Assembly: GCA_950097015.1 (NCBI GenBank)
Contig: CATNEN010000001.1
Location: 21,886,001 to 21,950,000 of the forward strand
From: Macrostomum hystrix
Lineage: Eukaryota > Animalia > Platyhelminthes
DNA: 64,000 nt
Reading direction: 5' to 3'
The notes under the pieces are model-generated. The model was not told the DNA's origin, did no database searches, and saw only the letters and a list, made by a program, of their open reading frames with translations. The position numbers were made by a program, and so were the translations under genes. Position 1 is the stretch's first letter; every line of letters begins with the position of its first letter. Below, piece after piece: positions 1-21,406 of the stretch.

Positions 1-3000
1 TCGGCTGCCTCGCCCGGCTCCAATGGCGTTGGAGTGCGCGTCACCCACCGGGTTGCCATGGCAGCCTGCCAGTGCCTGCAGACCCGCTGCGACTTGCAGC
101 TGGGCCGCGACCTGCCGGCCTGCCTTGACCTGTACAGCGGCGGCATGGCCTTCATTGTGGCCTGCCTGGCTAGCGTGGCATGCGGACATCACACCCTGCT
201 GATGCCCGCTGGTCAGTGGGAGCTCACAGCCTCGGGAGCTGCCGGGTTCCTGCAGATGCTGGCTCAGCGAACCGCTAGGGACGCCTTGTGCGGCTATGAA
301 CTGCTGGACAGATGCTGCGCCAGACTGCAGCCTGAGACTGTCAAGGTCTGTCCCGCGTGTGGCCTTGCTCGGCCTGGCTTTGGGGTGTCTGCCGGTCTAT
401 CGGGGTGTCTGTCTGTCTAATAGGGTGTCTGCCGGTCTATCGGGGTGTCTGTCTGTCTGTCTAATAGGGTGTCTGCCGGTCTATCGGGGTGTCTGTCTGT
501 CTAATAGGGTGTCTGCCTGTCTAATAGGGTGTCTGCCGGTCTATTGGGGTGTCTGTCTATCTAATAGGGTGTCTGCCTGTCTAATAGGGTGTCTGCCGGT
601 CTATTGGGGTGTCTGTCTATCTAATAGGGTGTCTGCCGGTCTATCGGGGTGTCTGTCTAATAGGGTGTCTGCCTGTCTATTGGGTGTCTGCCGGTCTATT
701 AGGGTGTCTGCCTGTCTATTGGGTGCCTGCCGGTCTATTAGGGTGTCTGCCTGTCTATTGGGGCGTCTTCCTGTCTATTAGGGTGTCTGCCTGTCTAATA
801 GGGTGTCTGCCGGTCTATTAGGGTGTCTGCCTGTCTATTAGGGTGTCTGCCTGTCTAATAGGTTGTCTGCCGGTCCATTGGGGCGTCTTCCTGTCTATTA
901 GTGTGTCTGCCTGTCTATTAGGGTGTCCTCCTGTTTATTAGGATGTCTGTCTACTCATTCTAGGCACCGGCTAGTTCTTTCTTATTCGCTCGCTTTTTTA
1001 CATGTCTATCTCTCACTTTCTTACTTTCTCGTCATTTATCGTATATTGTTTCATACATTAGTCTGATCTTCCTATTCCAAGCTTTGGATCTTAATATCAA
1101 ATGCTAAAATTAGGTCTGGTATTCTAGAATGGACCTAATAATTAGGTAGCAGCACCAATAAAGTAGATCGAGGCACTTTGGTCCTTCTAAGTATCAGTTA
1201 TTTGTGTTTAGGTCTAAAAATACTTTTTTCTTCACACGAGTTTCTACTATTGTTTATGCCACAATGACTTTAACTAGACCTTATTATTATCGAAGATTGC
1301 GCTTAAAAATATCTAAATTCTCTGTCTTGACATCAGATTTAACTGCGTTTGACTGTACTTTGTCTATCAAAATTTCATTTCGATACTAATAGCTTGGAAA
1401 CATACGTTTAGAGAAGCAGAGGTGTGTACCTGCTGTGTTAAGCCACGAATTAAAAAAATTATATAAACTTACGTTGGAAGCGCCCGATATGTATCGAAAA
1501 AAGCATTATAAATCCAATATCTTTTAATTGATCAGCAAAAGCACAGCCTGGCCAGCCTGCGCTCCCTGGTGGTTCTGGGCAACGAGCGGCCACGTGCCGA
1601 CCTGCTAGCCAAATTCGGCCGCCTCCTTGTGCCTCTGGGCCTGAGTCCCAGTGCTCTCCGCTGCTCATTTGGATGCCGCGCCGTCCCGTGCCTGACGCTG
1701 CCATCCGGCGCCACCGACTCGTCCGGCTCTGCTACCATCTACGCCGACGCCAAAGCGCTCAGAGAAGATCGCCTGGTACCAGTTGACTCGGACAGTCCCA
1801 ATGCCATTGTACTAATGGAGGCCGGACAGCCCATAGCCGATGCTCGGGTATCGCTGGCTACTCCGGCTGTGCGAGGCGCCGACGTCGGCGAGATTCTAGT
1901 GAAACTCCGCGGCAACCAGCTGGCAACCCGGACTGGCTACCTGGGCGTCATCAGACAGCTGGACGAGTCCCGGCCGCCGGCACTGTTCGTCGTCGGCTCG
2001 CTGACAGACAGCCTGACTGGGCTGGGAGGCGCCAGCGGCCTTCGCTACTATCCTGCTGATCTGGAGGCCTCCGCTATTCGCTGCCACCCTGCTGTCATTG
2101 ACTGGTGAGTGCGGCCTCCTGCTGCCTGCCTGTCTCTGGGCTGGTTAGGGGTGGGCTGTGGAGTCTGGGCTTGTTAGGGATGGGTTGTGGAGTCTGGGCT
2201 GGTTAGGGGTGGGCTGTGGAGTCTGGGCTTGTTAGGGATGGGTTGTGGAGTCTGGGCTGGTTAGGGGTGGGCTGTGGAGTCTGGGCTGGTTAGGGATTGG
2301 CTGTGGATTCTGGGCTGGTTAGGGATGGGTTGTGGAGTCTGGGCTGGTTAGGGATGGGTTGTGAAGTCTGGGCTGGTTAGGGATGGGTTGTGCAGTCTGG
2401 GCTGGTTAGGGGTGGGCTGTGGAGTCTGGCTGGTTAGGGATGGGTTGTGGAGTCTGGCTGGTTAGGGATGGGTTGTGCAGTCTGGGCTGGTTAGGGGTGG
2501 GCTGTGGAGTCTGGGCTTGTTAGGGGTGGGTTGTGGAGTCTGGGCTGGTTAGGGGTGGGCTGTGCAGTCTGGGCTGGTTAGGGGTGGGCTGTGCAGTCTG
2601 GGCTGGTTAGGGATGGGTTGTGGAGTCTTATCTGGATACCATCATTCATATTTAACTTTTCTAGCTGTCACTCAGTGCAGTTAAATGTTAGTTAACCAGC
2701 TGCTCACTGATTTTATTGGATTTTATTGAGCATGATTTCCATAAAAAGGGTTTAACTGTAGGAAAAAGAATTAAATAATCTAATAATGCTGGTTAAACTG
2801 AAACTATTTCACAGTGCCGTCTTCGCTTGCGACACTCTCTTGGCCATTGTGCTGGAGATCAACTGTCGCGAGTCTGACGCCCTGGACGCAGTGCCCCAGA
2901 GCGCGACTGCGCTGCTGCGCGAGCACCAACTGGTGGCTTCCATTGTTGTGGTGTGCGAACCTGGCGCCATTCCTACTAATAGCCGAGGCGAAAAGCTGCA

Positions 3001-5906: not shown

Positions 5907-6464
5907 TTAATGTCCCGATGGCGACACGAACTCGCACAAAACATCCGAAGCAGAATATGTTTCGGCAGCATCCAGCAAATGATCCACACCTGGGAACCTA
6001 ATCACTGTATTTTCACCTGTGCCTGAGTTGCTCGGCTCTCCAGACAAACGAGCTGAAGCTGATGTTGCAGCTGATCCAGAGCCAACCACCCGCAGGCTCC
6101 GGACTGCCTGCTGGCTGGTAGCCTCCGAGCCAGAATTTTTTCACAACACTGGAGTTGAAGTATAAGGAGTCCGCGTGGCTCATCTCCGAGACGCTGGTCA
6201 CATCGGCCATGATCACCAGACCGCTCTGCGACTCGCACTTCTTTCTGCTGGGCCACCAGTAGCCGATGCCAGTGACAGTCGGTACTTCACTCCGCACTGC
6301 TCCATGCCGTAGCCAGACGGACACAGCGCGCCCGCCTCGAGTCCCGGTCGCTGCTTCACAAACACATAGCCTCTCCTTGCGCAGCCGCAGATCTTTACCG
6401 ACTTGCTGCACTTGTCGAACACGAACAGCTGACACGGACCGTCAGCCATTGTGAAGGCCTGGCA
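5907..6464 (-). pseudogene. PAN/C-type lectin pseudogene (psi): 5'-deleted, two frameshifts
   Basis: Core is homologous to the intact paralogs; 1-nt deletion near 6275 and 7-nt deletion near 6040; signal peptide and N-terminal PAN half missing; C-terminus reads SGEPSNSGTGENTVIRFPGVDHLLDAAETYSASDVLCEFVSPSGH*. Confidence 0.85.
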
Positions 6465-6717
6465 ACGCGCTTTACATGACTTTATATACTGATTTCTTTC
6501 AGTTGTCCGCAATCGTCACTGCGATTGAAGCCAAGCTTGAAAAATTGAACTGCCTTCAATTCTGGCTTCTGACACGATTCCGATTGGACAGAACCTTTCC
6601 AGAACAAGAACTACTCATTCACAGTAGTTGAACGCGAGTTTCACTTAAACTCTGTTGTGAAATCAATATGAGAGCTTAAGAATGTACCCCTTCAAATCTG
6701 TTAGGATGTGTTAGGAT

Positions 6718-6766
6718 CAGACGGACCAGCGCGCCCGCCTTGAGTCCTGGTCGCTGCTTCACAAAC
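6718..6766 (-). pseudogene. Orphan fragment of the lectin constant core
   Basis: CAGACGGAC-CAGCGCGCCCGCCTTGAGTCCTGGTCGCTGCTTCACAAAC matches the core region encoding FVKQRPGLEAGALCPS. Confidence 0.75.
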
Positions 6767-7374
6767 TAGAATAGTCTGAACAAGACGTCTCCAAACTCTT
6801 CAAATGTCTTCACAAACTATTCTTGCTATTTAGCTAGACTAGGATGAATATATAGCAGCAATCACTTGTCCATACGGATTGTTCGTTTTGGAAATATAGT
6901 CTCAAAGAGTCTCAAAAGTTCATTGCAAGCAAAGTAGCTAAGAAGTCTTACTCCAGAAAATATTGACACGAACGCAAAAACAATCTACAGCTGCATTGAA
7001 GGAATTCCTAGAAAGTCGTAAAAACCTTTCTCTAAGTCGAGATGAGTGTTGAGGCTTGAGATGTACACTAAGCAGGTTTGTCCTATCCAGTTTGTCCTCG
7101 CAGCAGAATTTTTTGTCTGGCTTCGCTTCCAAGTCATTGACAAAATACGCAATTAACGTTAGATTCCCTTCTTTCAGTACGCAATTATAGCACGTTTTTT
7201 TTAACATAAATGCAAACATCTGACTGAAATAGGCCCAAAACCTGACGACTGGGATCCGAGATCTTACAAAACCTTGTTTCTATGGCTACAACAGCAAAAT
7301 CCTCCCTTGCAGGATAAATTTGCAACAAATCGAAGTCGAAAAAGTGAGAAGCCAGAAGAGGGAACGCAGTGATA

Positions 7375-8106
7375 ATGCTCTTCATTACTTTTCAACTTCT
7401 TGCGATTCTGCAACTCGTTAATGCCAGAGAGGAGCTGTATAACAAGGTCAATGCAAGCCTCTGCGTGCAAAAGAGATACGCCGAGGAACACTTTCACAAA
7501 AACAAGCTTGCATGCGCAGCTCTGTGCAGTGGCAACCCGCGATGTCAGGCCTTCACAATGGCTGACGGTCCGTGTCAGCTGTTCGTGTTCGACAAGTGCA
7601 GCAAGTCGGTAAAGATCTGCGGCTGCTCAAGGAGAGGCCAGGTGTTTGTGAAGCAGCGACCGGGACTCGAGGCGGGCGCGCTGTGTCCGTCTGGCTACGG
7701 CATGGAGCAGTGCGGAGTGAAGTACCGACTGTACACTGGCATCGGCTACTGGTGGCCCAGCAGACAGAAGTGCGAGTCGGAGAGCGGTCTGGTGATCATG
7801 GCCGACGTGACCAGCGTCTCGGAGATGAGCCACGTGGACTCCATCTGCTCGAACTATAGTAAAGGAGCTGCAGTGTGGCTCGGAGGCTACCAGCCAGCAG
7901 GCAGTCCTGAGCCTGCGGGTGGTTGGCTCTGGATCAGCTGCAACATCAGCGTCTATGCAGCTCTGTGGGCCACAGCAGAGCCCAACGACGGATTTGGAGC
8001 TGAAAATGTAGCCGCACGATTTCATGTGAAGCAAGGCCTCATTGACGTCAATGAAACATTTTCTGTTACTGATGTGCTTTGTGAGTGCACGTCTCCGCTT
8101 AACTGA
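7375..8106 (+). CDS. Secreted PAN/Apple + C-type lectin domain protein, copy A (intronless)
   Basis: Hydrophobic signal peptide MLFITFQLLAILQLVNA; PAN Cys pattern CAALC-x5-CQAF...CQL; CTLD motifs CPSGY, WLGG, WLW, W...EPN...EN, VLCE. First ATG is at 7375 (the ORF track starts at GTG 7369). Confidence 0.88.
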   Translation: MLFITFQLLAILQLVNAREELYNKVNASLCVQKRYAEEHFHKNKLACAALCSGNPRCQAFTMADGPCQLFVFDKCSKSVKICGCSRRGQVFVKQRPGLEAGALCPSGYGMEQCGVKYRLYTGIGYWWPSRQKCESESGLVIMADVTSVSEMSHVDSICSNYSKGAAVWLGGYQPAGSPEPAGGWLWISCNISVYAALWATAEPNDGFGAENVAARFHVKQGLIDVNETFSVTDVLCECTSPLN

Positions 8107-9733
8107 TCCCTCGCACTCAATGCAAATCGACTCGGAGCTGTGCCGGACAATGCAGGCATAGTATTAAGTTGTCCAGGTGTGTTAATGAGATTTGAGTTGA
8201 ATTCCGCTCTCTTTTGTCTGTCTCCGAACACTACGGTCGTTGACTGCAATCAACGTGAAATCGAGCTTTAAAAGATGATTTGATAATTTTTCTAATTTTG
8301 CTTTTTCTAGTCGCGAAACCAAAATTTTTACATGAAGACGTTTATTTGATGTGATACTTACTCATACATACTTATACTAGAAAACATCCTTGCTAGCAGG
8401 ACTAGAACAGCAAAAATAATAAAGTCGCCTAAAAGTATTTGTTTATTATGAACAAAAGTGAATGTATATTATGTGAAGCAGCAGATCGTTTTAATAAATA
8501 GTTTCTTGCCGCGAAAGCTGTGTATTTTTAATAAGTTTTTTTCAAATTCTGTTGAATATATTCTTCTTTGTTCCAAATATACCTGTAATGTGAGTTCACA
8601 AATTAAACCTTTTATCAAATATATATTTCAGCTTCTCAAAAAAAAATTTGACTCCCTAAAAGTTAACGCCACGAGTTGGCAATTCTGTTGCTCATTTCCG
8701 CGCGGTGTGGACTTTTATGCTGAGATTTTCGAATTTCAGTTTAAATTCGATTACAGTTGCGCGAATCGGCAAATGTTGTGTTAATAACCTAGGCTTTCGG
8801 GATCTGGAGTCATTAACGTGACACCCTAGCATACACCCCAGCGCATGCCCCTGTGTTCGGTTCAACAATAAAACTCTGAGGACACATTCATAAGCAAAGT
8901 AGCGTTCACAAGCCTATAGGTGCTCAACAAGCCTCAAGCCTTCTCTCAAAAGGCGTCTCTAACTAAAAAAAGTTGCTATTTTGAAAAAAATATTACACTC
9001 TTTCGTGTCTTGAAGCAGTGAGTTTCAGCTCAGAATGGAAGCTACTACGAGTATATTGATCTTTTTATCTCACGGCCCTTCATCGTGGCTCATGAAAGCG
9101 TGACACAATACCTTTTCTAATAGCCTAAAAACTGTCTAAAAGTCATCGCTAGTCACCTGGAAAAGTCCCAGCTTTGAAGCCCTTACCTAACACAACTCAT
9201 TCTTTTTGTGGAATCTGCTGAATTGCTATGCGAGGCTAGTTATTGCCACACTAAAAGATCCCCAACCAAAAATGGTACGACAAAAGCTTGTTTGAGCTCA
9301 AATCGATGAAGTTTGTGAATAGATGCTATTATAGAAGGGGACAAAGTTCTTCTTGGTAACGAAGCAACAAGTTAAACGATCGGCTTTAAAAATCACCGGC
9401 ATCAACTTTTCTGCCAAAACAGACAATATTCGATGAATATAAAATAAATGGAGTCCAGATTTAGTCAGATCTGCTGAAAACCGATATTGCTACTTCGCTT
9501 GACCAGGGAACGTTTTAGGAACCTGGAAATTCGAATAAATCGAGTTCGTTACTCTTCAGACACTTTGCTTGCACATTTTGCCTTGAAAACATTTTTGACG
9601 TCAGCGATTTGTTATAAATTACTCTTATTTAAAGCAAACTGAGAATGATAGGCAATGCTAGGTTCTAAGATAAATCTATATCTAGTCACAGTGTCATCAA
9701 ACAGTAGCAAAAAGTCCTGATTTCGAGTTAGAA

Positions 9734-10477
9734 TCAGTCAAATGGTGACACGCACTCGCACAGGACGTCGAAGGCATTGAATCTTTCGGAAGCGTCGAGT
9801 AATTTAGTTTGGCCAGGGTACCGGATAACCTTGTTTTCAGTGGATCCGGCATTGTTGGGCTCTCCGCTTCTCCAAACGAACGAGCTGAAGCTGATGTTGC
9901 AGCCGACCCAGAGCCAACCGCCCGCTGGCTCCGGACTGCCTGCTGGCTGGTATCCTCCAAGCCACACTGTTCTTCCGACACTGAAGTTCGAGCAGATGGA
10001 GTCCACGTGGCTCATCTCCGAGACGCTGGTCACGTCGGCCATGATCACCAGACCGCTCTCCGACTCGCACTTCTGTCTGCTGGGCGACCAGTAGCCGATG
10101 CCAGTGTACAGTCGGTACTTCACTCCGCACTGCTCCATGCCGTAGCCAGACGGACACAGCGCGCCCGCCTCGAGTCCCGGTCGCTGCTTCACAAACACCT
10201 GGCCTCTCCTTGAGCAGCCGCAGATCCTCACCGACTTGCTGCACTTGTCGAACACGAACAGCTGACACGGACCGTCAGCCATTGTGAAGGCCTGGCATCG
10301 CGGGTTGCCACTGCAAATTACACTGCAGTAAAAAATGTCCTGCAAATTTGATTTAGTCTCGATGAAGTCTCCGTTGATGCACAGGTTAGCGTCAACGAGG
10401 TTGTAGATGTCTTCACTTGCACCGCAGATTCGCAAGCACAGACTCATCAGCCCAAGAGCCCTTGGAATCCAAAACAT
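9734..10477 (-). CDS. Secreted PAN/Apple + C-type lectin domain protein, copy B (intronless)
   Basis: ATG 10477, signal peptide MFWIPRALGLMSLCLRICGA, same architecture, EPNN motif. Confidence 0.88.
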   Translation of the reverse strand: MFWIPRALGLMSLCLRICGASEDIYNLVDANLCINGDFIETKSNLQDIFYCSVICSGNPRCQAFTMADGPCQLFVFDKCSKSVRICGCSRRGQVFVKQRPGLEAGALCPSGYGMEQCGVKYRLYTGIGYWSPSRQKCESESGLVIMADVTSVSEMSHVDSICSNFSVGRTVWLGGYQPAGSPEPAGGWLWVGCNISFSSFVWRSGEPNNAGSTENKVIRYPGQTKLLDASERFNAFDVLCECVSPFD

Positions 10478-11032
10478 TGCAGTAGTCTTTTATCTGGTCT
10501 TCCTTTTCTTTGTTTTAAAGTAAATCCTTCTTGCCTTATCAAGAATTCACCTGCTTCCATTCCGAACGCGCTTTACATGACTTTATATGCTGATTTCTTT
10601 CAGTTGTCTGCAATCGTCACTGCGATTGAAGCCAAGCTTGAAAAATTGAACTGCCTTCAATTCTGGCTTCTGACACGATTCCGATTGGACAGAGCGTTTC
10701 CAGAACAAGAACTACTCATTCACAGTAGTACAACACGAGTTTCACTTAAGCTCTGTTGTGAAAGCAGTATGAGAGCTTCAGAATGTACCCCTTCAAATCT
10801 GTTAGGATCTAAGTCGTCGCCTTGGAGGTGGAAATGCGATTTGTTTATTGCTGGAGACTAACAACGTAATACTTTGCTGTAAGCGTATAGTTTCTTTCCA
10901 GTATTGTTTCGGTAAAGTTCAAAGAGTTCTTGGTAGGCAAATAACCAACGTATGACTCGTCACAAGGAACCGCAGACTCCTGACAGGTGTCTCTGTCAGG
11001 AGTATTGATCTCTGATCCCTGATTTTGATCCC

Positions 11033-11193
11033 TGCTTGGCCACCAGTCGATGTCGATATCGATAGTCGATGTCCGTGTACAGTCGGTACTTCACTCCGCA
11101 CTGCTCCGCGCCGTAGCCAGACGGACATAGCGCGCCAGCATCGAGTCCCGGAGCCAGACGGACACAGCGCGCCAGCCTCGAGTCCCAGTCGCT
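11033..11193 (-). pseudogene. Degenerate orphan fragment of the lectin constant core with an internal tandem duplication
   Basis: GTGTACAGTCGGTACTTCACTCCGCACTGCTCC...AGCCAGACGGACA matches the core; a ~37-bp block is duplicated. Confidence 0.75.
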
Positions 11194-12122
11194 TCTAGTT
11201 TTAGTAAATAGTGCCTTAGAGTGGAAGCAACCAGTTTTTGCAAATTCTTTTGAATAAGTGCATCTTTGTTTTATAGAATGTCTGCAATGGGAGTTTACAA
11301 ATAGAAGCTTTTATCAAAAATAGATTTCATATTCTTTAAGTTAAATATACAAGAAAACCTATTCCGACTCCCTAAAATTACAGCCACGAGTTGAAAATTC
11401 TGTTGTTCATTTCCGCGCGCTGTGGACTTTTAATTTGAGATTTTCGAACTTAAGTTTAAATATGAGTACAGTTGCGCAAATAGGCAAATATCATGTTAAT
11501 AACCTTGACTTTCAGGATCTTGAGTCATTCACCTGACCCCTCAATCAGGAAAAGGGAGCATACACCCTTGGTATCCCTTGGTATATACGGTACAACAATG
11601 CAACAATGTATGCTTTCGTTAAAATATGTGGTTTTATCAGATCACTTAGTCTAAGTTAATTGTAAAAAGGTTTTTGAAATATATAAAAAGTCGCGACAGA
11701 AATCCACTACGTTGCAAATATACTGCTTCTATAGTAAGCCATCAAACTTCACAATTTTATTTCTCATTTACTTTAATCGTTTAAGAAAAGCTTCCAAGGA
11801 CTTCGTAAGTTGAAGTAAATGTACGAGTAAAAATAACTAATGATGAGAAAGAAGTTCAGAAGCATTCGGAAAGGATTGTCCAGAGCAATTGTGTATAAAG
11901 TACAAAGTCCTCGTAAAATGTTCCCCTAATTAACACCGTGAATAAAATCGCTTCGGCAGATAAAAATATATCAGTTCATAGTTTGTTTCTGTTGTTTCTA
12001 GTCTTTTGCAATGTTATTTTCTAATGTTTTCAGGTCTTATCTGAGTTAGATAAGACAATTAATTATTCGATTCAACCGAGTGTGAGACATCACTAGGCAG
12101 CTCCGACACGCAAAAGCTGCGA

Positions 12123-12872
12123 TCAGTCGAAGGGCGAAACACACTCGCACAGCACGTCCGAAACAGGGTATGTTTCGGGAACATCCAGTAGCTTCGTTTT
12201 GTCAAAGCGCCAGATTACCGTGTTTTCAACATCTCCGGCATTGTTTGGCTCAATATTCCTCCAAACGAACGAGCCGAAGCTGATGTTGCAGTCGATCCAG
12301 AGCCAACCGCCCGCTGGCTCCGGACTGCCTGCTGGCTGGTAGCCTCCGAGCCAGAATTTTTTCACAACACTGGAGTTGAAGTATAAGGAGTCCACGTGAC
12401 TCATCTCCGAGACGCTGGTCACGTCGGCCATGATCACCAGACCGCTCTCCGACTCGCACTTCTGTCTGCTGGGCCACCAGTAGCCGATGCCAGTGAACAG
12501 TCGGTACTTCACTCCGCACTGCTCCATGCCGTAGCCAGACGGACACAGCGCGCCCGCCTCGAGTCCCGGTCGCTGCTTCACAAACACCTGGCCTCTCCTT
12601 GAGCAGCCGCAGATCCTCACCGACTTGCTGCACTTGTCGAACACGAACAGCTGACACGGACCGTCAGCCATTGTGAAGGCCTGGCATCGCGGGTTGCCAC
12701 CGCATAAGACTCCGCAGGCAAAGTAAATTCTCTCCTGTGAGTAAGTCTCGACGAACTCATCGTTGATGCAGAGGCTGGCGTCAATGACGCTGTAAAGCTG
12801 CTCGATGCGGTCTCCGAAGACGAGACGCTGACTTAACAAAGAGATCAGGAGTGGCCAGAAGTTTATAATCAT
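12123..12872 (-). CDS. Secreted PAN/Apple + C-type lectin domain protein, copy C (intronless)
   Basis: First ATG at 12872 (MIINFWPLLISLLSQRLVFG signal-like), same architecture, EPNN motif. Confidence 0.88.
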   Translation of the reverse strand: MIINFWPLLISLLSQRLVFGDRIEQLYSVIDASLCINDEFVETYSQERIYFACGVLCGGNPRCQAFTMADGPCQLFVFDKCSKSVRICGCSRRGQVFVKQRPGLEAGALCPSGYGMEQCGVKYRLFTGIGYWWPSRQKCESESGLVIMADVTSVSEMSHVDSLYFNSSVVKKFWLGGYQPAGSPEPAGGWLWIDCNISFGSFVWRNIEPNNAGDVENTVIWRFDKTKLLDVPETYPVSDVLCECVSPFD

Positions 12873-13383
12873 ATTTTTATGCTTGCAATATCGCAACGGC
12901 TCTAAGAAGTTTACAAGCGTTTTTGTTGCAAATAATATTCAAGCGATGCCTATTTATAGCTAGTTTTATGGAAAAGTTTGTGACAATATTCTTTTTTTAA
13001 ATAACTTCCCTGAAGTTATTCGCATTAGTGCCAGCTTTGATTTTGTGTTGCCAATATTTGACAGCATGATTGACTCTGCTGTTTTAATTGCGGAGTCTTG
13101 CTTGTAGCTTTTAGGGTTGAAAAGGTGTCGGCCTTTATTAGACTAAGACTAGAAAGTCGCTTTGATCTAAAATGATCTGTGCGGCAGTTTAGTGCTACAT
13201 CCGCAAACAAAGTAATGCATCGACATTTAAAATATTTTTTTGAAAGGGCTCATTATTTTCGCTCCTGATATTTAACTTTTCGTATGAGCGCGTGAAAGAA
13301 GTTTTGCTTATTTGAGTATTTGCCTTTGTCGGCAAAAATTGTTTTTAGCTGTGCATAATCTGTGTTATTTAGCATAAGTATAA

Positions 13384-13702
13384 GAGGTTGTAGCCTAGTG
13401 GTTAGGGCGTCGGACTCACGACTTGAAGGTCGGGGGTTCGATTCCCGACTCGACTGGAACAATTTGCGTCCTTTAGCAAGACACTTAACTCTGCATTGCT
13501 TCAGTTCACCCAGCTGTTAAATGGGTACCAGCATCAGCTGGGATAATTGAAGGTGGGTGTGGCGTCCCCCCAGTCCGTGGACTGAACAGCTGTACGCAGC
13601 CTTCAGATGCGCCGCGCATTAGCTGCGGCTGTGCTGTCGGCTGCACATCTGACCCAATTGGGGAAGGTGTAATCAATTATTATTATTATTATTATTATTA
13701 TT
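13384..13702 (+). mobile_element. tRNA-derived SINE family 1, copy 2, with (TTA)n tail and 10-bp TSD
   Basis: A/B boxes (GGTTCGATTCC), (TTA)n tail, direct repeat ATAAGTATAA at 13374-13383 and 13703-13712. Confidence 0.88.
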
Positions 13703-14305
13703 ATAAGTATAACGCTTAGCAAGAGCTCATATTTGCACACAAATTTGATATCTAATTGCAATCATAATCGGCACATCACAAAACTTGCGAAATTACGAAA
13801 CCCAACAAATCTGTAATGATGACTAAGCCTGACTCGGAGATTCAAGCTTCACTAGCAACTTTTCCACATTACTCAACACAAAAATGTTTCACAGAATTCC
13901 TATTTCTTAAATTTCAATTCGATTGTGCATTCTGACATTCACTATACCTGACAACAAAGCCACGTCTGACAGGACAGTCACTTCTGACAGAACATCCACC
14001 TCTCAGAGAAAATTTTTTGTGAAATATTTTGCAAACCAGCTGCCGTTGCAAACTTTGCTGCTTCAAATGAGCTTTTTTGCTCTCTGATTTATTTAACTTT
14101 ACCTTAACAGTTTGGCTAAGTAAACTCCGCTGCGTTCAATTTAATTCAGATCGAGTGTAGAAAACGACGATTGCTTCCTATAATCCTTAGAATGTAATCT
14201 TGAAGGAGGCAAATAAATATATTCAAGACCTTTGAAGAAAATGAACTAGTTGATTTATCCCACAAAAATCACTCAGTAACGAAATGTCTCTTTTGAAAGT
14301 CGCGA

Positions 14306-15067
14306 TCAATCAAAGGGTGACACGCACTCGCACAGAACGACCAGTGCAGGGAACGTTTCGGTTGCATCGAGCAATTTAGTTTTCGTGGGGTGCCAGATAA
14401 CCGTGTTTTCATTGGATCCGGAATTGGTCGGCTCTCCGCTACTCCAAACGAACGAGCTGAAGTTGATGTTGCAGCCGACCCAGAGCCAACCACCCGCAGG
14501 CTCAGGACTGCCTGCTGGCTGGTAGCCTCCGAGCCACACTGCAGCTCCTTTACTAAAGTTCGAGCAGATGGAGTCCACGTGGCTCATCTCCGAGACGCTG
14601 GTCACGTCGGCCATGATCACCAGACCGCTCTCCGACTCGCACTTCTGTCTGCTGGGCCACCAGTAGCCGATGCCAGTGTACAGTCGGTACTTCACTCCGC
14701 ACTGCTCCATGCCGTAGCCAGACGGACACAGCGCGCCCGCCTCGAGTCCCGGTCGCTGCTTCACAAACACCTGGCCTCTCCTTGAACAGTCGCAGATCCT
14801 CACCGACATGCTGCACTTGTCGAACACGAACAGCTGACACGGACCGTCAGCCATTGTAAAGGCCTGGCATCGCGGGTTGCCACTGCATAGGACTCCGCAG
14901 ATTATATGTCTGGTCTCCTGTGAGTGAGTCTCCACAAACTCAGCTTTGATGCAGAGGCTGGCATCAATCACGCTGTAAAACTGCTCGATGCGGTCTCGGA
15001 GCGCGAGGCGCTGACCAAACAGCATGGTTGCACTAATTAAGAGTAGTGGCCAGAAGTTGATAGTCAT
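14306..15067 (-). CDS. Secreted PAN/Apple + C-type lectin domain protein, copy D (intronless)
   Basis: First ATG at 15067 (MTINFWPLLLISATMLFG), same architecture, EPT in place of EPN. Confidence 0.88.
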   Translation of the reverse strand: MTINFWPLLLISATMLFGQRLALRDRIEQFYSVIDASLCIKAEFVETHSQETRHIICGVLCSGNPRCQAFTMADGPCQLFVFDKCSMSVRICDCSRRGQVFVKQRPGLEAGALCPSGYGMEQCGVKYRLYTGIGYWWPSRQKCESESGLVIMADVTSVSEMSHVDSICSNFSKGAAVWLGGYQPAGSPEPAGGWLWVGCNINFSSFVWSSGEPTNSGSNENTVIWHPTKTKLLDATETFPALVVLCECVSPFD

Positions 15068-15624: not shown

Positions 15625-16440
15625 TGTCACTCCAGACACACTGTCCCTGCCAGCACCCTAACACTCTTAACACCCATTGTCACTCCAGACACACTGTCCC
15701 TGCCAACACCCTGACACTCTTAACACCCATTGTCACTCCAGACACACTGTCCCTGCCAACACCCTAACACTCTTAACACCCATTGTCTCTCCAGACACAC
15801 TGTCCCTGCCAACACCCTGACACTCTTAACACCCATTGTCACTCCAGACACACTGTCCTTGCCAACACCCTGACACTCTTAACACCCATTGTCACTCCAG
15901 ACACACTGTCCCTGCCAACACCCTGACACTCTTAACACCCATTTTCTGTCCAGACACACTGTCCCTGCCAACACCCTGACACTCTTAACACCCATTGTCT
16001 CTCCAGACACCCACTGTCTCTCCTGACAGCCACTGTCTCTGGTGACACCCTCTGTCCCTCCTGACACTCAGTCTCTCCTGACACCCACTGTCTCTCCTGA
16101 CACCCATTGTTTCTCCTGACACCTGCACTGTCTCTTCTGACACCCACTGGCTCTCCTGACAGCCACTGTCTCTCCAGACACACTGTCCCTGCCAACACCC
16201 TGACACTCTTAACACCCATTGTCTCTCCAGACACACTGTCCCTGCCAACACCCTGACACTCTTAACACCCATTGTCTCTTCTGACACCCACTGTCTCTCC
16301 TGACAGCCACTGTCTCTGGTGACACCCTCTGTCTCTCCTGACACCCATTGTCTCTCCTGACACCCACTGTCGCTGGTGACACTCTCTGTCCCTCCTGACA
16401 CCCACGTCTTTCCTGACACCCACTCTCTCTTCTGACACCC
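15625..16440. repeat. 53-bp minisatellite (TGTCACTCCAGACACACTGTCCCTGCCAACACCCTGACACTCTTAACACCCAT) grading into ~21-bp CTGACAC subunits
   Basis: Tandem units visible directly. Confidence 0.88.
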
Positions 16441-16487
16441 AATGGGAGCAGAAACTGAACTCTTTAGGAACTCCAGTTTATAGCAGT

Positions 16488-16712: not shown

Positions 16713-19700
16713 TCAAGCAAAGCCAGCCATGTAAAAGTCAGGAGGCCGGCGTTCTCTCGCCGAGCGTCGGAGAGCCTCGGCCGGCTCGGGCGGGGCCGCC
16801 GGCGGATCATCGGACCGCACGTTTTGGTCCGGTTCCGGCCAGCCGACCACCGCATCGCCACCCGGGTCAGCCGCTGGACTGGGCGGTCGCACGGCGAGGC
16901 CGTTGGCGTTCGTGTCGGCATCGGCGGCAGCAGGCAGCTCCAGCGACGGCCGCCGCTGAATGAAGAGTCGGAGCCGGTCGTGGTGCACCACCAGCTTGCG
17001 CCGGCGGCCTGCCTGGTCCTGGATGCGGTAGTTCACCTCGCCGAGGCGCCGCAGGATCCGATACGGCCCCTTCCATTTGTCGCTGAGGCACCGCGTCTGG
17101 CCGCGCTTGACGACGGAGTTGCGCAGCATTACCAGCTGGCCCTCTTCAAACGGCACGAATCTGGCACCCTGGTTGACTCGCTGGTTGCGCGCCGCCTGGG
17201 CGTCCCGCAGCCGGCCGTGCACCGCGTCAAAGGCGCCCTGCAGGTTCGCTTGCGTCTGCTGCAGAAAGTCGTGCGGGCTGCCGCTCGCCGCCTTGTCGCC
17301 GTCCACCAGCCAGCTGTCGAGCGCCAGCCGCGGCGGCCAGCCATGCAGGACCTGGTACGGGCTGAGGCCGGTGGTGCTGTGCACAGAGGTGTTATAGGCC
17401 CAGGTAACGTAGTGCAGCTTCCGGTCCCAGTCCTGCTGGCTCTCCGACACGACCGTCGCCAGCATGTCGCCCAGTGTCCGGTTGCCGCGCTCCACGACGC
17501 CGTTGCCGCTTGGGTGGAATGGCGATGTGCGAGTTTTCTCGATGCCCAGCTGCTCGCAGAGCCGGACGAAGACGTCGCTCTCAAACTGCCGTCCTTGGTC
17601 GCTGTGCAGCACTTGTGGGGCACCGTGCCGCAGCACAACGGCTCTGAGCAGCGCATCCGCCACCGTCACGGCGTCGATCGTCGCCAGCGCCGATGTCTCC
17701 ATCCACTTGGAGAAGGTGTCGCACATGCTGAGGATGTAGGCGTTGCCGTCTGTCGTGCGCGGCAGCGGGCCTTTAATATCGATCTGCACCTGCTGCCAAG
17801 GCGCTGTCGGCTGGCCTGTCGTCTGCAGCGGTGCCCGCTGCGGCCTGGTTGGACTCTTCTTGGTTAGGCAGGCGGCGCAGCTCGCCACCCAGTTCTCCGC
17901 GTCCCGCCGCAGGCCCGGCCACCAGCAGCGCTCCGCCAGCCTCGCCACCGTCCTGTCAACACCGAGGTGGGCGCTCTGGTCGCTGGAATGCGCCTCCTGC
18001 AGGAAGTGCGGCCGCAGGTGGCTGGGAATGACCGGCTTGCCGTGGAACAGCAGGACGCCCGCCGTACTTATTGATGCCCCGTCCAGCAGCTCGCGAACCT
18101 GCGCCGCCCAGGTGTCAGACAGATTGTCGATTCCTGTCGCTAGCGCCTGGAACGCCTTGCTCAGTAGCGTGTCCTGCCGCTGCTCCTCATGCAGGCGCGC
18201 GGCCTCCCAGCGGGGCTGCAGGCGCGTGCCGGCCACCCGGCTCAGTGCGTCCGGCACAACGTTCTCCCGGCCTGGCCGGTACAGCAGCGAGAAGGAGAAC
18301 TGCTGCAGCGTAGACAGCCACCGCGCCAGCCTGCCTTCCGGGTCCTTGGTCGCCAGCAGTCCCTGAAGCGGCCGATGGTCGGAGTAGACGGTGAAGCTGG
18401 GAACACTGAGCAAGTACGTTCTGAAGTGCTTCAAGCTCCACACCAGCGCCAGCAGCTCCCGGTCTGTCGCCGAGTAATTTCGCTCCGCCTTGTTGAGCGT
18501 GCGCGATGCGAAAGCCACAGGCAGCTCAGCGTCCCCGTGCAACTGGCTGAGCACGGCGCCCACTGCGAACTGGCTGCTGTCGCAGCTCAAAACGAACTGC
18601 TTGCTGAAGTCGGGCAGCCGCAGCACCGGGGCAGTCGTCAACTTGTCCTTCAGCTCGTTGAACGCCCGCTCGCAACTGCTGCTCCATCTAAAGTCTCTCG
18701 CTGTCTGGCTGACGTCGTGCAGCACCCTCGCAGTCTGGCTGAAGTCCTGGATGAAGCGGCGATAGAAGCCTAGCATGCCGAGGAACCGCTTCACCTCCTC
18801 TGCTGTCGTCGGGCTGGGCATGCTGCGGATGGCGTCCACCTTGCTCGGGTCTGGCGCGATGCCCTGCTCGCTGACCCGGTGCCCCAGGTACAGCACCTGG
18901 CGGTGGCCGAAGACACTCTTCGCCCTGTGCAGCTTGAGCCCGGCCCCTCGAAGCCGCTGAAGGACCTGTGCTAGCCGCGCCAGATGCTCGTTGAAGGTTC
19001 TGCTGAAGACGATGATGTCGTCGATGTAGGTCAGCACCACCTCCCAGGATAAGCCGGACATGACGAGCTCCATAAGGCGCTGAAATGTCGCTGGGGCGTT
19101 GCACATCCCGAAGCCCATCTTGCGGAACTGCATCAGGCCGCGGGTGGAGTAGAAGGCAGTCTTTGGCCGGTCTTCCTCTGCCACCTCCACCTGGTGATAA
19201 CCCTGCCGGCAATCGATGGTGGAGAACCAGGAACAGCCGACCAGTGCGTCCATGGCTTGCTGCAGATGCGGCAGCGGGTAGGCGTCCTTGACTGTGGAGG
19301 CGTTCAGCTGTCGCCAGTCGGTGCAGAGCCTGATGTCGCCGTTCTTCTTGCGCACCACCAGGAGGTTGCTGGCCCAAGGAGACATGGACGGCTCGATGAT
19401 GCCGCTGTCCAGCATCTGGCCGATCTTCTTGTCTACCTGGTCCCGCACGGACAGAGGCAGACGTCGCTGAACCTGCCTGTGCGGCCGCGTTCCGGGCTCC
19501 AGATCTATCCTGTGCTGCAGCAGCTCCGTCGTGCCCAGGTCGTACTCGTGCCTTGCGAAAAGGTCCTCGTTTTGCTCCAGCAGCTGGCGCAGCTTCTCCG
19601 CATCCGCTTCGGACAGCTCCGGGTTGATGTTCCAGCCGAGGGGGTCCTCCTGGAGATAGTCGCTCCTCCCCCCGGCCATCGCACCCTCGAACGTCCCGAC

Positions 19701-20405
19701 GGCTTTATTGGCGTACAGCAGCACAGGCTCCTCGGCCAGGTTGCACATCTTGACGGGGATTCGGCCGTCGTCCGAGATAGTCAGCACGCGCGCCGAAAGC
19801 ACCGCCGTGGCTGCTACGAAGTCCTCGCAGGGCTCGAACACTCCCTGCTCTCGGCTGGAGTCCACCCGGAGCCATACGACCTTCTCGCTCCGCGCCGGCA
19901 GCTCCGTGTTGACCGCCACGCGCGCCACCAGAACGCTTGGCACCAGGCGGCAACTGGCCCGCGGCTGCTCGCTGCTGAAAGCCACCGTATCGCTGTCGAA
20001 CCGGACGACGCCTTCCTTCATGTCGATGGTCACCGTCTGCGACACCCGGCCGATGAAGTCCATGCCGAGAATCAGTCTAGGTTGGATGCCGTCCACCACG
20101 GTAAAACTGTGCCGCGCTCGAATCGCGCTGCCGATCGCAACCTCCGCCGTCGTCAGGCCAAGGCAGCGCAGCCGCGAGCCGTCGACAGAGGTCGGCATGA
20201 CGCTGATGTCGCTGCAGTCGAGCCGGCAGTCAAGCTTGTCGTACAGCGACTTGTCCATCAGCGAAATCTGCGCGCCCGTGTCCAGCAGGGCGGGCGAGCT
20301 GTGCCTGCCGAAACGCACTGGCACAAAGATGGACGACGCTGATCTGTGGGCCCCTTGAGAGGGGGTCGGCGCTGGCCCCAGGCTGCCGACCCTCAGCAGT
20401 TTCCC
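16713..20405 (-). CDS. pol: Gypsy Pol polyprotein (aspartic protease, reverse transcriptase, RNase H, integrase), reached by -1 frameshift from gag
   Basis: LLDTGAQ protease; SPWAS/YPLP/YIDDII RT; LSCDSS...NYSATDRELLA...SDHRPL RNase H; H-H-C-C zinc finger, DDE core and WKGPY motif in integrase. ORF uninterrupted. Confidence 0.95.
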   Translation of the reverse strand, partial: GKLLRVGSLGPAPTPSQGAHRSASSIFVPVRFGRHSSPALLDTGAQISLMDKSLYDKLDCRLDCSDISVMPTSVDGSRLRCLGLTTAEVAIGSAIRARHSFTVVDGIQPRLILGMDFIGRVSQTVTIDMKEGVVRFDSDTVAFSSEQPRASCRLVPSVLVARVAVNTELPARSEKVVWLRVDSSREQGVFEPCEDFVAATAVLSARVLTISDDGRIPVKMCNLAEEPVLLYANKAVGTFEGAMAGGRSDYLQEDPLGWNINPELSEADAEKLRQLLEQNEDLFARHEYDLGTTELLQHRIDLEPGTRPHRQVQRRLPLSVRDQVDKKIGQMLDSGIIEPSMSPWASNLLVVRKKNGDIRLCTDWRQLNASTVKDAYPLPHLQQAMDALVGCSWFSTIDCRQGYHQVEVAEEDRPKTAFYSTRGLMQFRKMGFGMCNAPATFQRLMELVMSGLSWEVVLTYIDDIIVFSRTFNEHLARLAQVLQRLRGAGLKLHRAKSVFGHRQVLYLGHRVSEQGIAPDPSKVDAIRSMPSPTTAEEVKRFLGMLGFYRRFIQDFSQTARVLHDVSQTARDFRWSSSCERAFNELKDKLTTAPVLRLPDFSKQFVLSCDSSQFAVGAVLSQLHGDAELPVAFASRTLNKAERNYSATDRELLALVWSLKHFRTYLLSVPSFTVYSDHRPLQGLLATKDPEGRLARWLSTLQQFSFSLLYRPGRENVVPDALSRVAGTRLQPRWEAARLHEEQRQDTLLSKAFQALATGIDNLSDTWAAQVRELLDGASISTAGVLLFHGKPVIPSHLRPHFLQEAHSSDQSAHLGVDRTVARLAERCWWPGLRRDAENWVASCAACLTKKSPTRPQRAPLQTTGQPTAPWQQVQIDIKGPLPRTTDGNAYILSMCDTFSKWMETSALATIDAVTVADALLRAVVLRHGAPQVLHSDQGRQFESDVFVRLCEQLGIEKTRTSPFHPSGNGVVERGNRTLGDMLATVVSESQQDWDRKLHYVTWAYNTSVHSTTGLSPYQVLHGWPPRLALDSWLVDGDKAASGSPHDFLQQTQANLQGAFDAVHGRLRDAQAARNQRVNQGARFVPFEEGQLVMLRNSVVKRGQTRCLSDKWKGPYRILRRLGEVNYRIQDQAGRRRKLVVHHDRLRLFIQRRPSLELPAAADADTNANGLAVRPPSPAADPGGDAVVGWPEPDQNVRSDDPPAAPPEPAEALRRSARERRPPDFYMAGFA
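20363..20405 (-). promoter_or_regulatory. -1 programmed ribosomal frameshift signal (G GGA AAC + 6-nt spacer + 8-bp stem)
   Basis: Heptamer GGGAAAC (20405-20399) is in the gag frame two codons before the stop; pol is in the -1 frame; stem GGGTCGGC/GCCGACCC follows. Confidence 0.82.
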
Positions 20406-21187
20406 TGCGGCTGTGCAGCTGGTGTCGGGCAGACCGCCGCCGTGTGCCCCTTGCCTGAGCACCTGCTGCAGCGGGCTCCTGCCGCTCTCGGGCACTGCCT
20501 CGCGATGTGGCCAACTTCCCCGCAGCTGAAGCACTTGATGGCCCTTTGACGGCTTTCCTTGCCTGCGGCTCCCGTTCGCACACCTGCAGCCAGCTGCTGA
20601 ACCTGCTGCTCCAGACGGCTGATCCGACTGTCCTCCGCCGTCACGGCTGCTGACGTCGCTGATGACTGGCGACTCACCAACTCAATGCGGGCCGCCCGGT
20701 CAATCAGGACTGTCAACGGACAGGAGTCCGCGTCCTGGTCTTTGAGCAGCGTATCTCTTACAGCTGCTGGGAGGAGGCGCATCAAGCGGAACTTCACGTC
20801 CTTCTCCCTGGCGTCCACAGAGTCGTCTGGCCGAGCCCGGAGGTGCAGCAGCTTGAGGTTGTACGCCAGCTCTCTCAAAGACTCATTTGGCCGACGTTTG
20901 CGTTCCTCAAACTCCTCCATCGCCCGGTAGCTGCTCAGGCTGTCGCCGAAGTGCCCGATGAGCTCCACCTTAAGCTGCTCGTAGCTCACTTTCTTTTCGT
21001 CTGGAAGTTCCCACACAAAGATCTGTGCCTCTCCAGACAGCAGCAGCTTCAACTTCTTCGCCTTCTTCTTATCGTCCCAGTCGCTGTCATCGGCGAAGTC
21101 TTCAAACATGCTTAGCCACATTCTGACATTTGAGTCACTGCCGGCGCCGCTGAACTTTTGCGGCAGTAAAGATTCTTGCTTAGTCAT
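20393..21187 (-). CDS. gag: Gypsy Gag with two CCHC zinc knuckles (264 aa)
   Basis: ATG 21187 just after the PBS; PQKFSG...WLSMFE capsid-like start; CFSCGEVGHIARQC and CSRCSGKGHTAAVC knuckles. Confidence 0.93.
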   Translation of the reverse strand: MTKQESLLPQKFSGAGSDSNVRMWLSMFEDFADDSDWDDKKKAKKLKLLLSGEAQIFVWELPDEKKVSYEQLKVELIGHFGDSLSSYRAMEEFEERKRRPNESLRELAYNLKLLHLRARPDDSVDAREKDVKFRLMRLLPAAVRDTLLKDQDADSCPLTVLIDRAARIELVSRQSSATSAAVTAEDSRISRLEQQVQQLAAGVRTGAAGKESRQRAIKCFSCGEVGHIARQCPRAAGARCSRCSGKGHTAAVCPTPAAQPQGNC

Positions 21188-21193
21188 GCTGAG

Positions 21194-21206
21194 ACCGCTG
21201 CCACCA
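21194..21206 (-). other. Primer binding site TGGTGGCAGCGGT (complementary to tRNA-Leu 3' end)
   Basis: 1 nt inside the 5' LTR; complements ...ACCGCUGCCACCA, the 3' end of eukaryotic tRNA-Leu as recalled. Confidence 0.8.
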
Positions 21207-21207
21207 G

Positions 21208-21406
21208 TGTAAGACGCTGGTTTGTTAGGTAGCATGCACACAATTCGCGAAGAGCCATACCGGCTCGCTAGCACTATTATATTTGGCCAGAAACACTGGG
21301 GTGGGCGTACCCACCCCCCAATCACGCCACGCAAGCACGCACGCAGGCGTGTACGCTCTACCCCCCGCAGTGTACACTGCGGGCCGCGAACTCTAAGCTG
21401 CTTACA
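21208..21406 (-). repeat. 5' LTR (199 bp)
   Basis: Identical to 16488-16686. Confidence 0.96.

What the first reader, a model, noticed from the sequence alone, without database searches (positions are those of the whole stretch)
5907..15067. Constant-core / variable-ends lectin cluster: candidate gene-conversion-based diversification system
Seen: four intact intronless PAN+C-type lectin genes share a 312-bp core (A 7531-7842, B 9998-10309, C 12387-12698, D 14570-14881). By eye, B differs from A, C and D at only about 4, 3 and 5 positions, third codon positions included. Immediately outside the core, identity collapses: the last 53 residues of A and B match at ~21 positions, and the N-terminal PAN halves of A and B at roughly 30%. 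The core straddles the domain boundary (second half of PAN, linker, first two helices of the CTLD). Known: the CTLD long-loop/EPN region is the ligand-binding surface. Inference: purifying selection cannot keep synonymous sites identical in old paralogs, so the scaffold is being homogenised by repeated conversion while both ends diversify. That gives a variable-constant-variable secreted receptor repertoire, possibly for immunity, mucus/adhesion or reproduction.
Basis: partly seen in the sequence, partly recalled or inferred. Interest (0 to 1): 0.88.

Follow-up and report, generated by a model that had tools for sequence, protein, structure and literature searches.

The report
Flatworm lectin genes with homogenised core
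Four neighbouring secreted lectin-like genes of the flatworm Macrostomum hystrix, plus broken copies, are old and divergent, but their middle ~310 bases keep being copied from one gene to another; this is a very clean but mechanistically ordinary case of gene conversion in a large undescribed gene family.

Summary
Genes A-D share a 312-nt core that differs at 3-7 positions. Synonymous difference (pS) is 0.03-0.04 in the core and about 0.5 at both ends.

The genome is the M. hystrix assembly. The genes belong to a family of at least 150 single-exon PAN-like + C-type-lectin-fold ORFs. Each genomic cluster carries its own core version.

Four results point to interlocus gene conversion confined to the core:
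- Core pS stays near 0.05 whatever the divergence of the ends (0.005-0.45). In the two youngest duplicate pairs the core differs more than the ends.
- Informative sites fall into blocks with conflicting groupings (permutation p<1e-4).
- The dead copy E keeps a 96% identical core.
- Core synonymous sites do diverge between distant clusters (pS 0.5-0.63), so there is no nucleotide-level constraint.

The protein core is also under purifying selection across species. No 12-codon window has dN/dS above 1, and nothing points to a dedicated or somatic diversity machine.

This scan reached the same reading on other pieces of this genome. Read-level checks could not be run.

The parts
7375..8106 (+). 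Gene A: intact single-exon ORF (243 aa from ATG) with signal-like N-terminus, PAN-like domain and C-type lectin fold. Core at 7531-7842.
   Evidence: ORF and translation. Core differs from B, C and D at 4, 5 and 7 of 312 nt. Shares a run of 18 consecutive polymorphic sites with D just 3' of the core.
9734..10477 (-). Gene B: intact ORF of 247 aa. Core at 9998-10309. This protein was modelled.
   Evidence: AlphaFold model pLDDT 93.9, pTM 0.89. Lectin-domain matches to CEL-I, langerin and codakine at TMt 0.75-0.85.
12123..12872 (-). Gene C: intact ORF (249 aa from ATG). Core at 12387-12698.
   Evidence: At B-CDS 481-519 it shares a block with E and F that differs from the A/D block.
14306..15067 (-). 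Gene D: intact ORF (253 aa from ATG). Core at 14570-14881. Its sugar-motif tripeptide is EPT, not EPN.
   Evidence: Its N end is closest to C and its C end closest to B.
5918..6469 (-). Pseudogene E. Relative to B it lacks -87..+180 (start codon, signal peptide, first half of the PAN-like domain), with the breakpoint exactly at the core's first codon. It also has a 1-nt deletion at B-CDS 371 and an 8-nt deletion at 605-612. Its core is still about 96% identical.
   Evidence: Pairwise alignment and three-frame translation, BLAST, repeat families D2, D5 and D6.
6464..6707 (-). Upstream flank of E, 95% identical to B's upstream flank. It shows E is a chimera: B-like upstream, C-like block after the core, and a divergent C end.
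   Evidence: Repeat family D7; alignment.
10565..10808 (-). Upstream flank of B, the partner of E's upstream flank.
   Evidence: Repeat family D7.
11063..11196 (-). Orphan fragment of the core (B-CDS ~285-380, 91-95% identical, with a 37-nt internal duplication) lying in otherwise unrelated intergenic DNA between B and C.
6718..6766 (-). Second orphan core fragment of about 50 nt, 94% identical to B-CDS ~282-331.

Best explanation
A-D, with dead copies E and F, are old tandem paralogs in a Macrostomum hystrix family of small secreted proteins (PAN/apple-like domain plus C-type lectin fold) with at least 150 members.

Their central ~310 nt is repeatedly overwritten from one paralog to another by interlocus (ectopic) gene conversion. 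This stretch encodes the second half of the PAN-like domain, the linker and the first helices of the lectin domain. It therefore behaves as one shared pool with only about 3-5% standing synonymous difference.

The two ends diverge as ordinary old duplicates (pS ~0.5) under relaxed purifying selection. They include the loop region that carries the sugar-motif tripeptide.

Conversion tracts stop where homology has already been lost. The conserved, GC-rich core therefore sustains its own homogenisation. As a side effect it lets N-terminal and C-terminal modules with different histories end up in the same gene.

What is shown:
- the dip in synonymous divergence across the core;
- core divergence that does not follow end divergence;
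- the mosaic block structure;
- the shared core in a pseudogene;
- the fold.

What is inferred:
- the molecular route (repair-templated conversion);
- that edge sharpness comes from heteroduplex rejection or selection against tracts entering the ends;
- any biological role (glycan recognition).
For: 1. The core has pS 0.034 against 0.47-0.48 at the ends in this cluster. The same dip appears in 38 within-cluster pairs genome-wide: 0.3-0.4 at the ends falling to 0.02-0.03 in the middle.
2. Over 49 pairs whose ends have pS 0.00-0.45, core pS is flat (slope 0.004 +/- 0.026, intercept 0.051). By bins of end divergence, core pS is 0.057, 0.049, 0.056 and 0.051 while ends pS is 0.005, 0.106, 0.215 and 0.381. 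A fixed slow rate in the core would predict proportionality.
3. In the two youngest duplicate pairs the core is more diverged than the ends (10/534 against 4/810 nt, Fisher p=0.016). Most of those core variants are alleles also carried by other paralogs of the same cluster.
4. Core synonymous sites are free to change. pS is 0.5-0.63 between distant clusters, there is no Rfam match in the core, and the RNA-folding z-score is 0.43.
5. Mosaic structure: informative sites read AB|CD at the N end, AD|BC at B-CDS 495-558 and AC|BD at the C end. There are 13 pattern switches against 24.8 expected (none of 10,000 shuffles as low). A and D share a run of 18 polymorphic sites (none of 2,000 shuffles as long).
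6. Pseudogene E, with a 267-nt deletion and two frameshifts, keeps a 96% identical core and carries C's block.
7. Each genomic cluster has its own core version, and A-D form a clade in the N, core and C trees. The ends therefore diverged in place rather than being imported.
8. GC3 is 0.81 in the core against 0.63-0.64 at the ends, as GC-biased conversion would give.
Against: - The published assembly was Illumina-polished (PMC10468722).
- Inside the chromosome-3 array, core divergence does not rise with distance from 0 to 6 Mb (Mantel p=0.22), and one copy on another contig shares that core. This is unusual for ectopic conversion. It may mean part of that array's core similarity reflects a recent burst of duplication.
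- The cross-species test for concerted evolution is undecided for the core (AU p=0.31).
- High GC3 in the core also occurs in clusters whose cores are less homogenised (0.71-0.79), so it is weak evidence.
- Pairs in the regression share genes and are not independent.
Confidence: 0.8

Rival explanations
1. No conversion, only rate differences. Either the core evolves about 20 times more slowly at synonymous sites (codon-usage selection or an embedded nucleotide-level element), or the ends are targets of focal hypermutation, as proposed for conotoxin mature regions.
For: The protein core is strongly conserved family-wide and in M. lignano. Core GC3 is high in all clusters. End pS is near saturation for most pairs, so a constant ratio cannot be excluded from deep comparisons alone.
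Against: Core pS is independent of end pS (slope 0.004), and the core exceeds the ends in the youngest duplicates. Core pS reaches 0.5-0.63 between clusters. Pseudogene E keeps the core. Noncoding flanks are as diverged as the ends or more. There is no Rfam family and no unusual RNA fold.
Confidence: 0.06
2. Assembly or polishing artefact: short-read polishing or consensus calling made the cores of distinct copies look alike.
For: The M. hystrix assembly went through several rounds of Illumina polishing (PMC10468722). A 312-nt repeat is longer than a short read, so reads inside it multi-map.
Against: Polishing cannot turn ~40% divergence into 1%. Every copy keeps private core variants, including E's frameshift and seven unique substitutions. 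The pattern respects codons. It recurs in dozens of loci with cluster-specific cores and graded tract edges. The assembly's reported quality value is 42.8, from an inbred line.
Confidence: 0.03
3. A dedicated diversification system: the constant core is a built-in recombination hinge used, in the germline or somatically, to generate new N-module/C-module combinations and new binding loops for an immune-type or mating-type recognition repertoire.
For: N and C modules of A-D have conflicting histories. E is a chimera. The sugar-motif tripeptide varies across the family (EPN, EPT, EPD, QPD, QPS, DPN). The family is very large and lineage-restricted.
Against: No window has omega above 1. No associated enzyme is nearby; the only reverse transcriptase belongs to a Ty3/gypsy element. 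Module re-pairing is an expected by-product of ordinary conversion or crossover. No somatic or expression data exist here.
Confidence: 0.1

Closest known systems
Interlocus (ectopic) gene conversion giving mosaic divergence in tandem paralogs, for example Caenorhabditis paralogs (PMC3966223), long-lasting mammalian gene pairs (PMC2720389) and HMA4 tandem copies in Arabidopsis halleri (PMC3749932; bioRxiv 10.1101/2025.10.29.685298)
   Same: A tract of near-identity that includes synonymous sites, flanked by old divergence. Block-wise conflicting site patterns, GC-rich tract, pseudogene copies taking part.
   Different: Here the tract is short (~310 nt), sits in the middle of the coding sequence, and has the same sharp 5' edge across a family of at least 150 genes on many contigs, with cluster-specific versions.
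Animal C-type lectin domain proteins (CEL-I, langerin, DC-SIGN, codakine, mosquito mosGCTL-1)
   Same: The fold matches at TMt 0.75-0.85 and the profile matches at E 2e-5 to 5e-5. A WLGG motif, an EPN-type tripeptide and a C-terminal CEC motif are present.
   Different: No Pfam Lectin_C hit at E<=0.1. The Asn of the 'WND' calcium/sugar site is missing in A-D (LLD or LID). The domain is fused rigidly to an N-terminal PAN-like domain. Sugar binding is untested.
Uncharacterised Macrostomum lignano 'C-type lectin domain-containing' and 'Apple domain-containing' proteins (UniRef A0A1I8..., PAA63283.1, PAA58610.1)
   Same: Same two-domain architecture and length, and the same conserved core motif (CQAF..DGPCQLFVF..CSKSVR..GLVIMADV). 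These are the only named relatives found.
   Different: Only 50% identical overall. No function, expression or evolutionary analysis was found for them in the searched literature.
Conopeptide-type 'constant region / hypervariable region' gene families (comparison from general knowledge)
   Same: Conserved segment, synonymous sites included, next to very divergent segments in a large secreted-protein family.
   Different: Conopeptide hypervariability carries strong positive selection and lies in separate exons. Here omega is below 1 and the constancy is explained by conversion within one exon.

Membership tests
C-type lectin-like domain (CTLD) | CTLD fold (two helices, two sheets, long loop region) | tested here: met
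   AlphaFold model pLDDT 93.9. Foldseek against PDB: CEL-I, langerin, CD23, DC-SIGN and codakine at E 2e-8 to 1e-6, TMt 0.75-0.85.
C-type lectin-like domain (CTLD) | Sequence-profile match to known CTLDs | tested here: inconclusive
   The family profile hits PDB CTLDs (mosGCTL-1 at 1.9e-5, codakine at 5.5e-5, selectins ~1e-3). No single protein reaches Pfam Lectin_C even at E<=0.1.
C-type lectin-like domain (CTLD) | Calcium-dependent sugar site (EPN/QPD tripeptide, Glu, and Asn-Asp of 'WND') | tested here: inconclusive
   EPN in A-C and EPT in D. The Glu (EN) and Asp are present, but the Asn is replaced (LLD/LID) in A-D. It is present as LND in the C7 cluster, which has QPD/QPS. Binding itself cannot be tested here.
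PAN/apple domain | Pfam PAN model above the gathering score | tested here: not met
   PAN_4 scores 17.5 bits against a cutoff of 27; PAN_1 scores 13.2 against 21.4.
PAN/apple domain | PAN/apple fold (sheet packed on one helix, disulfide-linked) | tested here: inconclusive
   The domain model has pLDDT 79.8 with strand-strand-helix-strand-strand-strand order. The top Foldseek hits are mostly PAN/apple modules (SRK, HGF N domain, plasminogen, factor XI, MIC4, Eimeria PAN, leech antiplatelet protein), but only at E 0.1-2 and TMq 0.5-0.6. The profile hits the Eimeria MIC5 PAN module at E 4.7e-4.
Concerted evolution by interlocus gene conversion | Tract of paralog identity including synonymous sites, bounded by old divergence | tested here: met
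   Core pS 0.034 against 0.47-0.48 at the ends, with unalignable flanks.
Concerted evolution by interlocus gene conversion | Divergence in the tract decoupled from the age of the duplicates | tested here: met
   Slope 0.004 +/- 0.026 over 49 pairs. The youngest pairs have core divergence above end divergence (Fisher p=0.016).
Concerted evolution by interlocus gene conversion | Mosaic structure or conflicting genealogies along the gene | tested here: met
   13 pattern switches against 24.8 expected (none of 10,000 shuffles as low). The longest shared run test for A-D was matched by none of 2,000 shuffles. Nearest neighbours differ between the segment trees.
Concerted evolution by interlocus gene conversion | Paralogs within a species more alike than orthologs between species, in the tract only | tested here: inconclusive
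   C-end data reject the neighbourhood clade for one C9 gene in favour of M. lignano orthologs (AU p=0.0066). Core data cannot decide (p=0.31). Only proteins of M. lignano were available.
Dedicated hypervariation systems (diversity-generating retroelements, AID/RAG-type or other somatic diversification) | Linked dedicated enzyme or template/variable repeat pair | tested here: not met
   The only enzyme ORFs within the neighbourhood are Ty3/gypsy gag and pol. The repeats are whole-gene paralogs, not template/target pairs.
Dedicated hypervariation systems (diversity-generating retroelements, AID/RAG-type or other somatic diversification) | Somatic or individual-level sequence variation | not testable with these tools

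The most novel reading that the evidence does not exclude
The homogenised core may be more than a passive conversion tract. It could be a maintained recombination hinge shared by more than 150 genes on many chromosomes. That hinge would let N-terminal (PAN-like) and C-terminal (lectin-loop) modules be re-paired across the family, giving a germline combinatorial glycan-recognition repertoire. The repertoire would carry varied EPN/QPD-type motifs and might serve immunity or sperm/partner recognition in this hermaphrodite.
Probability: 0.12. Interest if true: 0.6.

Novelty: new member of a known kind. Interest (0 to 1): 0.35.

Why it matters
The locus is an unusually clean natural example of region-limited gene conversion. 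A ~310-nt coding tract behaves as one shared pool across paralogs whose ends are near saturation.

It also comes with a simple diagnostic that separates conversion from slow evolution: core divergence is flat against end divergence, and it exceeds end divergence in the youngest duplicates.

For Macrostomum biology, it flags a family of at least 150 secreted PAN-like/C-type-lectin genes with varied sugar-motif tripeptides. I found nothing on this family in the papers I searched.

There is a practical caution too. Trees, dating and dN/dS scans on this family will mislead unless the core is analysed apart from the ends.

Tried and rejected
- Nucleotide-level constraint in the core was rejected. 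There is no Rfam match in the core (the only weak hit is tRNA-like at 13387-13454, below threshold), the RNA-fold z-score is 0.43, and core pS reaches 0.5-0.63 between clusters.
- The long alternative-frame and antisense ORFs across the core are read as a by-product of high GC3, not as genes.
- No positive selection was found. Every 12-codon window has omega below 1.
- Distance dependence of homogenisation inside the chromosome-3 array was tested and not found.
- The cross-species concerted-evolution test was inconclusive for the core.
- The copy between B and C (10927-11301) was checked as a possible decayed gene carrying a conversion footprint. It is only a ~110-nt orphan core fragment in unrelated DNA.
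- The ORF at 52685-53437 is a translated minisatellite, not a family member.

Tools that gave nothing:
- Exact sequences of A-D are not in the protein collection.
Full report
WHAT IS THERE

Window 5.9-15.1 kb holds four uninterrupted ORFs. From their first ATG they are A 7375-8106 (+), B 9734-10477 (-), C 12123-12872 (-) and D 14306-15067 (-), 243-253 aa each.

There is also a fifth, broken copy, E (~5918-6469, -), and two orphan fragments of the shared core (11063-11196 and 6718-6766). A sixth, truncated copy lies 20 kb upstream of the window (L005).

The region is flanked by minisatellites and an apparently intact Ty3/gypsy element.

The last 53 residues of A and B match at 21 positions. Their N-terminal halves match at about 29%.

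A sliding-window comparison of the genomic copies shows 95-100% identity across the core. Identity falls to 20-60% within a few tens of bases on the 5' side. On the 3' side the edge is ragged and differs from pair to pair.

Within the cluster, the proportion of synonymous differences is 0.034-0.036 in the core. It is 0.47-0.57 in the N end and 0.48-0.53 in the C end.

WHOSE GENOME AND WHAT FAMILY

The whole-genome handle has 220,453,370 bases in 42 contigs, one of them 13,505,968 bases long. These are exactly the total length, contig number and N50 published for the Macrostomum hystrix assembly (PMC10468722). The closest outside proteins are uncharacterised M. lignano 'C-type lectin' or 'Apple domain-containing' proteins at about 50% identity.

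A six-frame search of the genome finds at least 150 scored matches among 267 candidates. Nearly all are stop-free single-exon ORFs of 240-320 aa, in clusters on many contigs. A profile search of 1.8 billion representative proteins finds full-length relatives only in M. lignano and in a few unnamed transcript-sized contigs. I found no paper that describes this family.

WHAT THE PROTEIN IS

A model of mature B built on 60 family members is confident (pLDDT 93.9, pTM 0.89). Its C-terminal ~140 residues match solved C-type lectin domains (CEL-I, langerin, DC-SIGN, codakine) at TMt 0.75-0.85. The family profile hits PDB C-type lectins at E about 1e-5, although Pfam Lectin_C is not reached.

The N-terminal ~80 residues give only sub-threshold Pfam PAN hits. 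They give a profile hit to an Eimeria PAN module (E 4.7e-4). Their weak structural matches are almost all PAN/apple modules. I therefore call this domain PAN-like.

The core covers the second half of that domain, the linker, and the lectin domain up to the middle of helix 2. The variable parts are the first half of the PAN-like domain and the lectin loop region.

The sugar-motif tripeptide varies across the family: EPN, EPT, EPD, QPD, QPS and DPN.

THE PATTERN IS FAMILY-WIDE AND CLUSTER-SPECIFIC

I aligned 57 intact members from seven genomic clusters. Each cluster has its own near-constant core version, flanked by variable ends.

Within clusters, core pS against end pS:

| Cluster | Core pS | End pS |
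|---|---|---|
| This cluster (C1:21.9) | 0.034 | 0.47-0.48 |
| C1:26.75 | 0.06 | 0.08 (N end), 0.45 (C end) |
| Chromosome-3 array (spans Mb; one copy on another contig) | 0.10 | 0.61-0.68 |
| Other four clusters (C9, C7:8.8, C7:2.5-2.9, C25) | 0.20-0.35 | 0.24-0.71 |

Between distant clusters, core pS reaches 0.5-0.63. Synonymous sites in the core are therefore free to change. An embedded RNA element or second reading frame is not the cause. The absence of any Rfam match in the core and an RNA-folding z-score of 0.43 agree with this.

CONVERSION OR A SLOW CORE?

This is the key question, because deep comparisons are saturated at the ends.

I binned all pairs by the divergence of their ends:

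| Ends pS | Core pS |
|---|---|
| 0.005 | 0.057 |
| 0.106 | 0.049 |
| 0.215 | 0.056 |
| 0.381 | 0.051 |

Over the 49 pairs with ends pS below 0.45, the regression slope is 0.004 +/- 0.026 and the intercept is 0.051. A fixed rate ratio predicts proportionality. A pool homogenised by conversion predicts exactly this plateau.

In the two youngest duplicate pairs the core is more diverged than the ends (together 10/534 against 4/810 nt, Fisher p=0.016). Most of those core variants are alleles that other paralogs of the same cluster also carry.

Within the local cluster, parsimony-informative sites form blocks with conflicting groupings. C groups with D at the N end, A with D at B-CDS 495-558, and B with D at the C end. 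There are no informative sites at all between positions 105 and 495. I counted 13 pattern switches against 24.8 expected, and none of 10,000 shuffles gave as few. A and D share a run of 18 polymorphic sites, matched by none of 2,000 shuffles.

Pseudogene E is also telling. It lacks the start codon, signal peptide and first domain half, and it has two frameshifts. It still has a 96% identical core. It combines a B-like upstream flank (95%), C's block just after the core, and a divergent C end.

A-D form a clade in the N, core and C trees, so their ends diverged in place rather than being imported from sampled clusters. Core GC3 is 0.81 against 0.63-0.64 at the ends. This fits GC-biased conversion, but it is weak evidence, since less homogenised clusters also have a GC-rich core.

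WHAT IS NOT SUPPORTED

No 12-codon window has omega above 1; the range is 0.06-0.9, and 0.3-0.65 in the variable ends. The ends look like old copies under relaxed purifying selection, not actively diversified ones.

The protein core is also conserved across species. It is 61-69% identical in the listed M. lignano homologs and about 90% in the closest one, P0006. Purifying selection on a scaffold at the domain interface therefore contributes to the constancy at the protein level.

There is no linked dedicated enzyme. Nothing here speaks to somatic variation, expression or function.

CAVEATS

Polishing could erase a few true core differences. It cannot create the pattern, because every copy keeps private variants and the signal recurs with graded edges in dozens of loci.

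Inside the chromosome-3 array, homogenisation shows no distance dependence. Part of that array's similarity may therefore reflect recent duplication.

The cross-species test is one-sided. C-end data reject the neighbourhood grouping for one gene (AU p=0.0066), but the core data are too short to decide (p=0.31). The groups were also named after seeing the tree.

Gene pairs in the regressions are not independent.

RELATION TO EARLIER WORK IN THIS SCAN

Notes on other pieces of the same genome describe the same family, and their follow-ups reached the same reading: region-limited conversion, no positive selection, M. hystrix, at least 150 genes. I treated these as leads. The species identity, family size, conversion evidence and lack of positive selection reported here all rest on my own calls.

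VERDICT

It is a textbook-quality but mechanistically familiar case of interlocus gene conversion confined to a conserved core, in a large, lineage-restricted and undescribed lectin-like family. The 'diversification system' reading is not excluded but has no positive support.

Noticed in passing
window 16713-21334 (-): Apparently intact Ty3/gypsy retrotransposon right next to gene D. It has a 1273-aa pol ORF (protease, RT, RNase H, integrase) and a 313-aa gag ORF with a zinc knuckle. GC is about 64%, against about 45% around it.
   Followed up: partly
window 372-949, 2135-2628, 15625-16441, 24100-25176, 27220-30000+, 52685-53437: Many long minisatellite arrays with periods of 19-53 nt. One runs for about 87 copies of a 32-nt unit. 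The one at 52685-53437 reads as a 250-aa repeat 'ORF'. The arrays bracket the lectin cluster.
   Followed up: partly
window 33185-34774 (+): ORF of 529 aa with RhoGEF and PH domains. It is probably one exon of an ordinary signalling gene and is unrelated to the cluster.
   Followed up: no
window 13387-13454 (+): Weak tRNA-like Rfam match (26.6 bits, below the gathering score of 29) between genes C and D. ARAGORN finds no tRNA. It may be a SINE or tRNA relic.
   Followed up: partly
window 6464 (junction in pseudogene E): E's 267-nt deletion ends exactly at the first codon of the family-wide conserved core (TGCCAGGCC...). The 5' edge of homogenisation is equally sharp across the whole family. 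Why this edge is so fixed is not explained.
   Followed up: partly
G000 C7:2.71 Mb and C7:2.907 Mb (L034, L036): A recent segmental duplication carries several family members with identical ends but different cores. This is a good place to date single conversion events.
   Followed up: partly
G000 C7:2.5-2.9 Mb cluster (L031-L036): This subfamily has QPD, QPS or QPT instead of EPN and keeps the Asn-Asp of the 'WND' site. This suggests a different (galactose-type) sugar preference from the window's genes.
   Followed up: no
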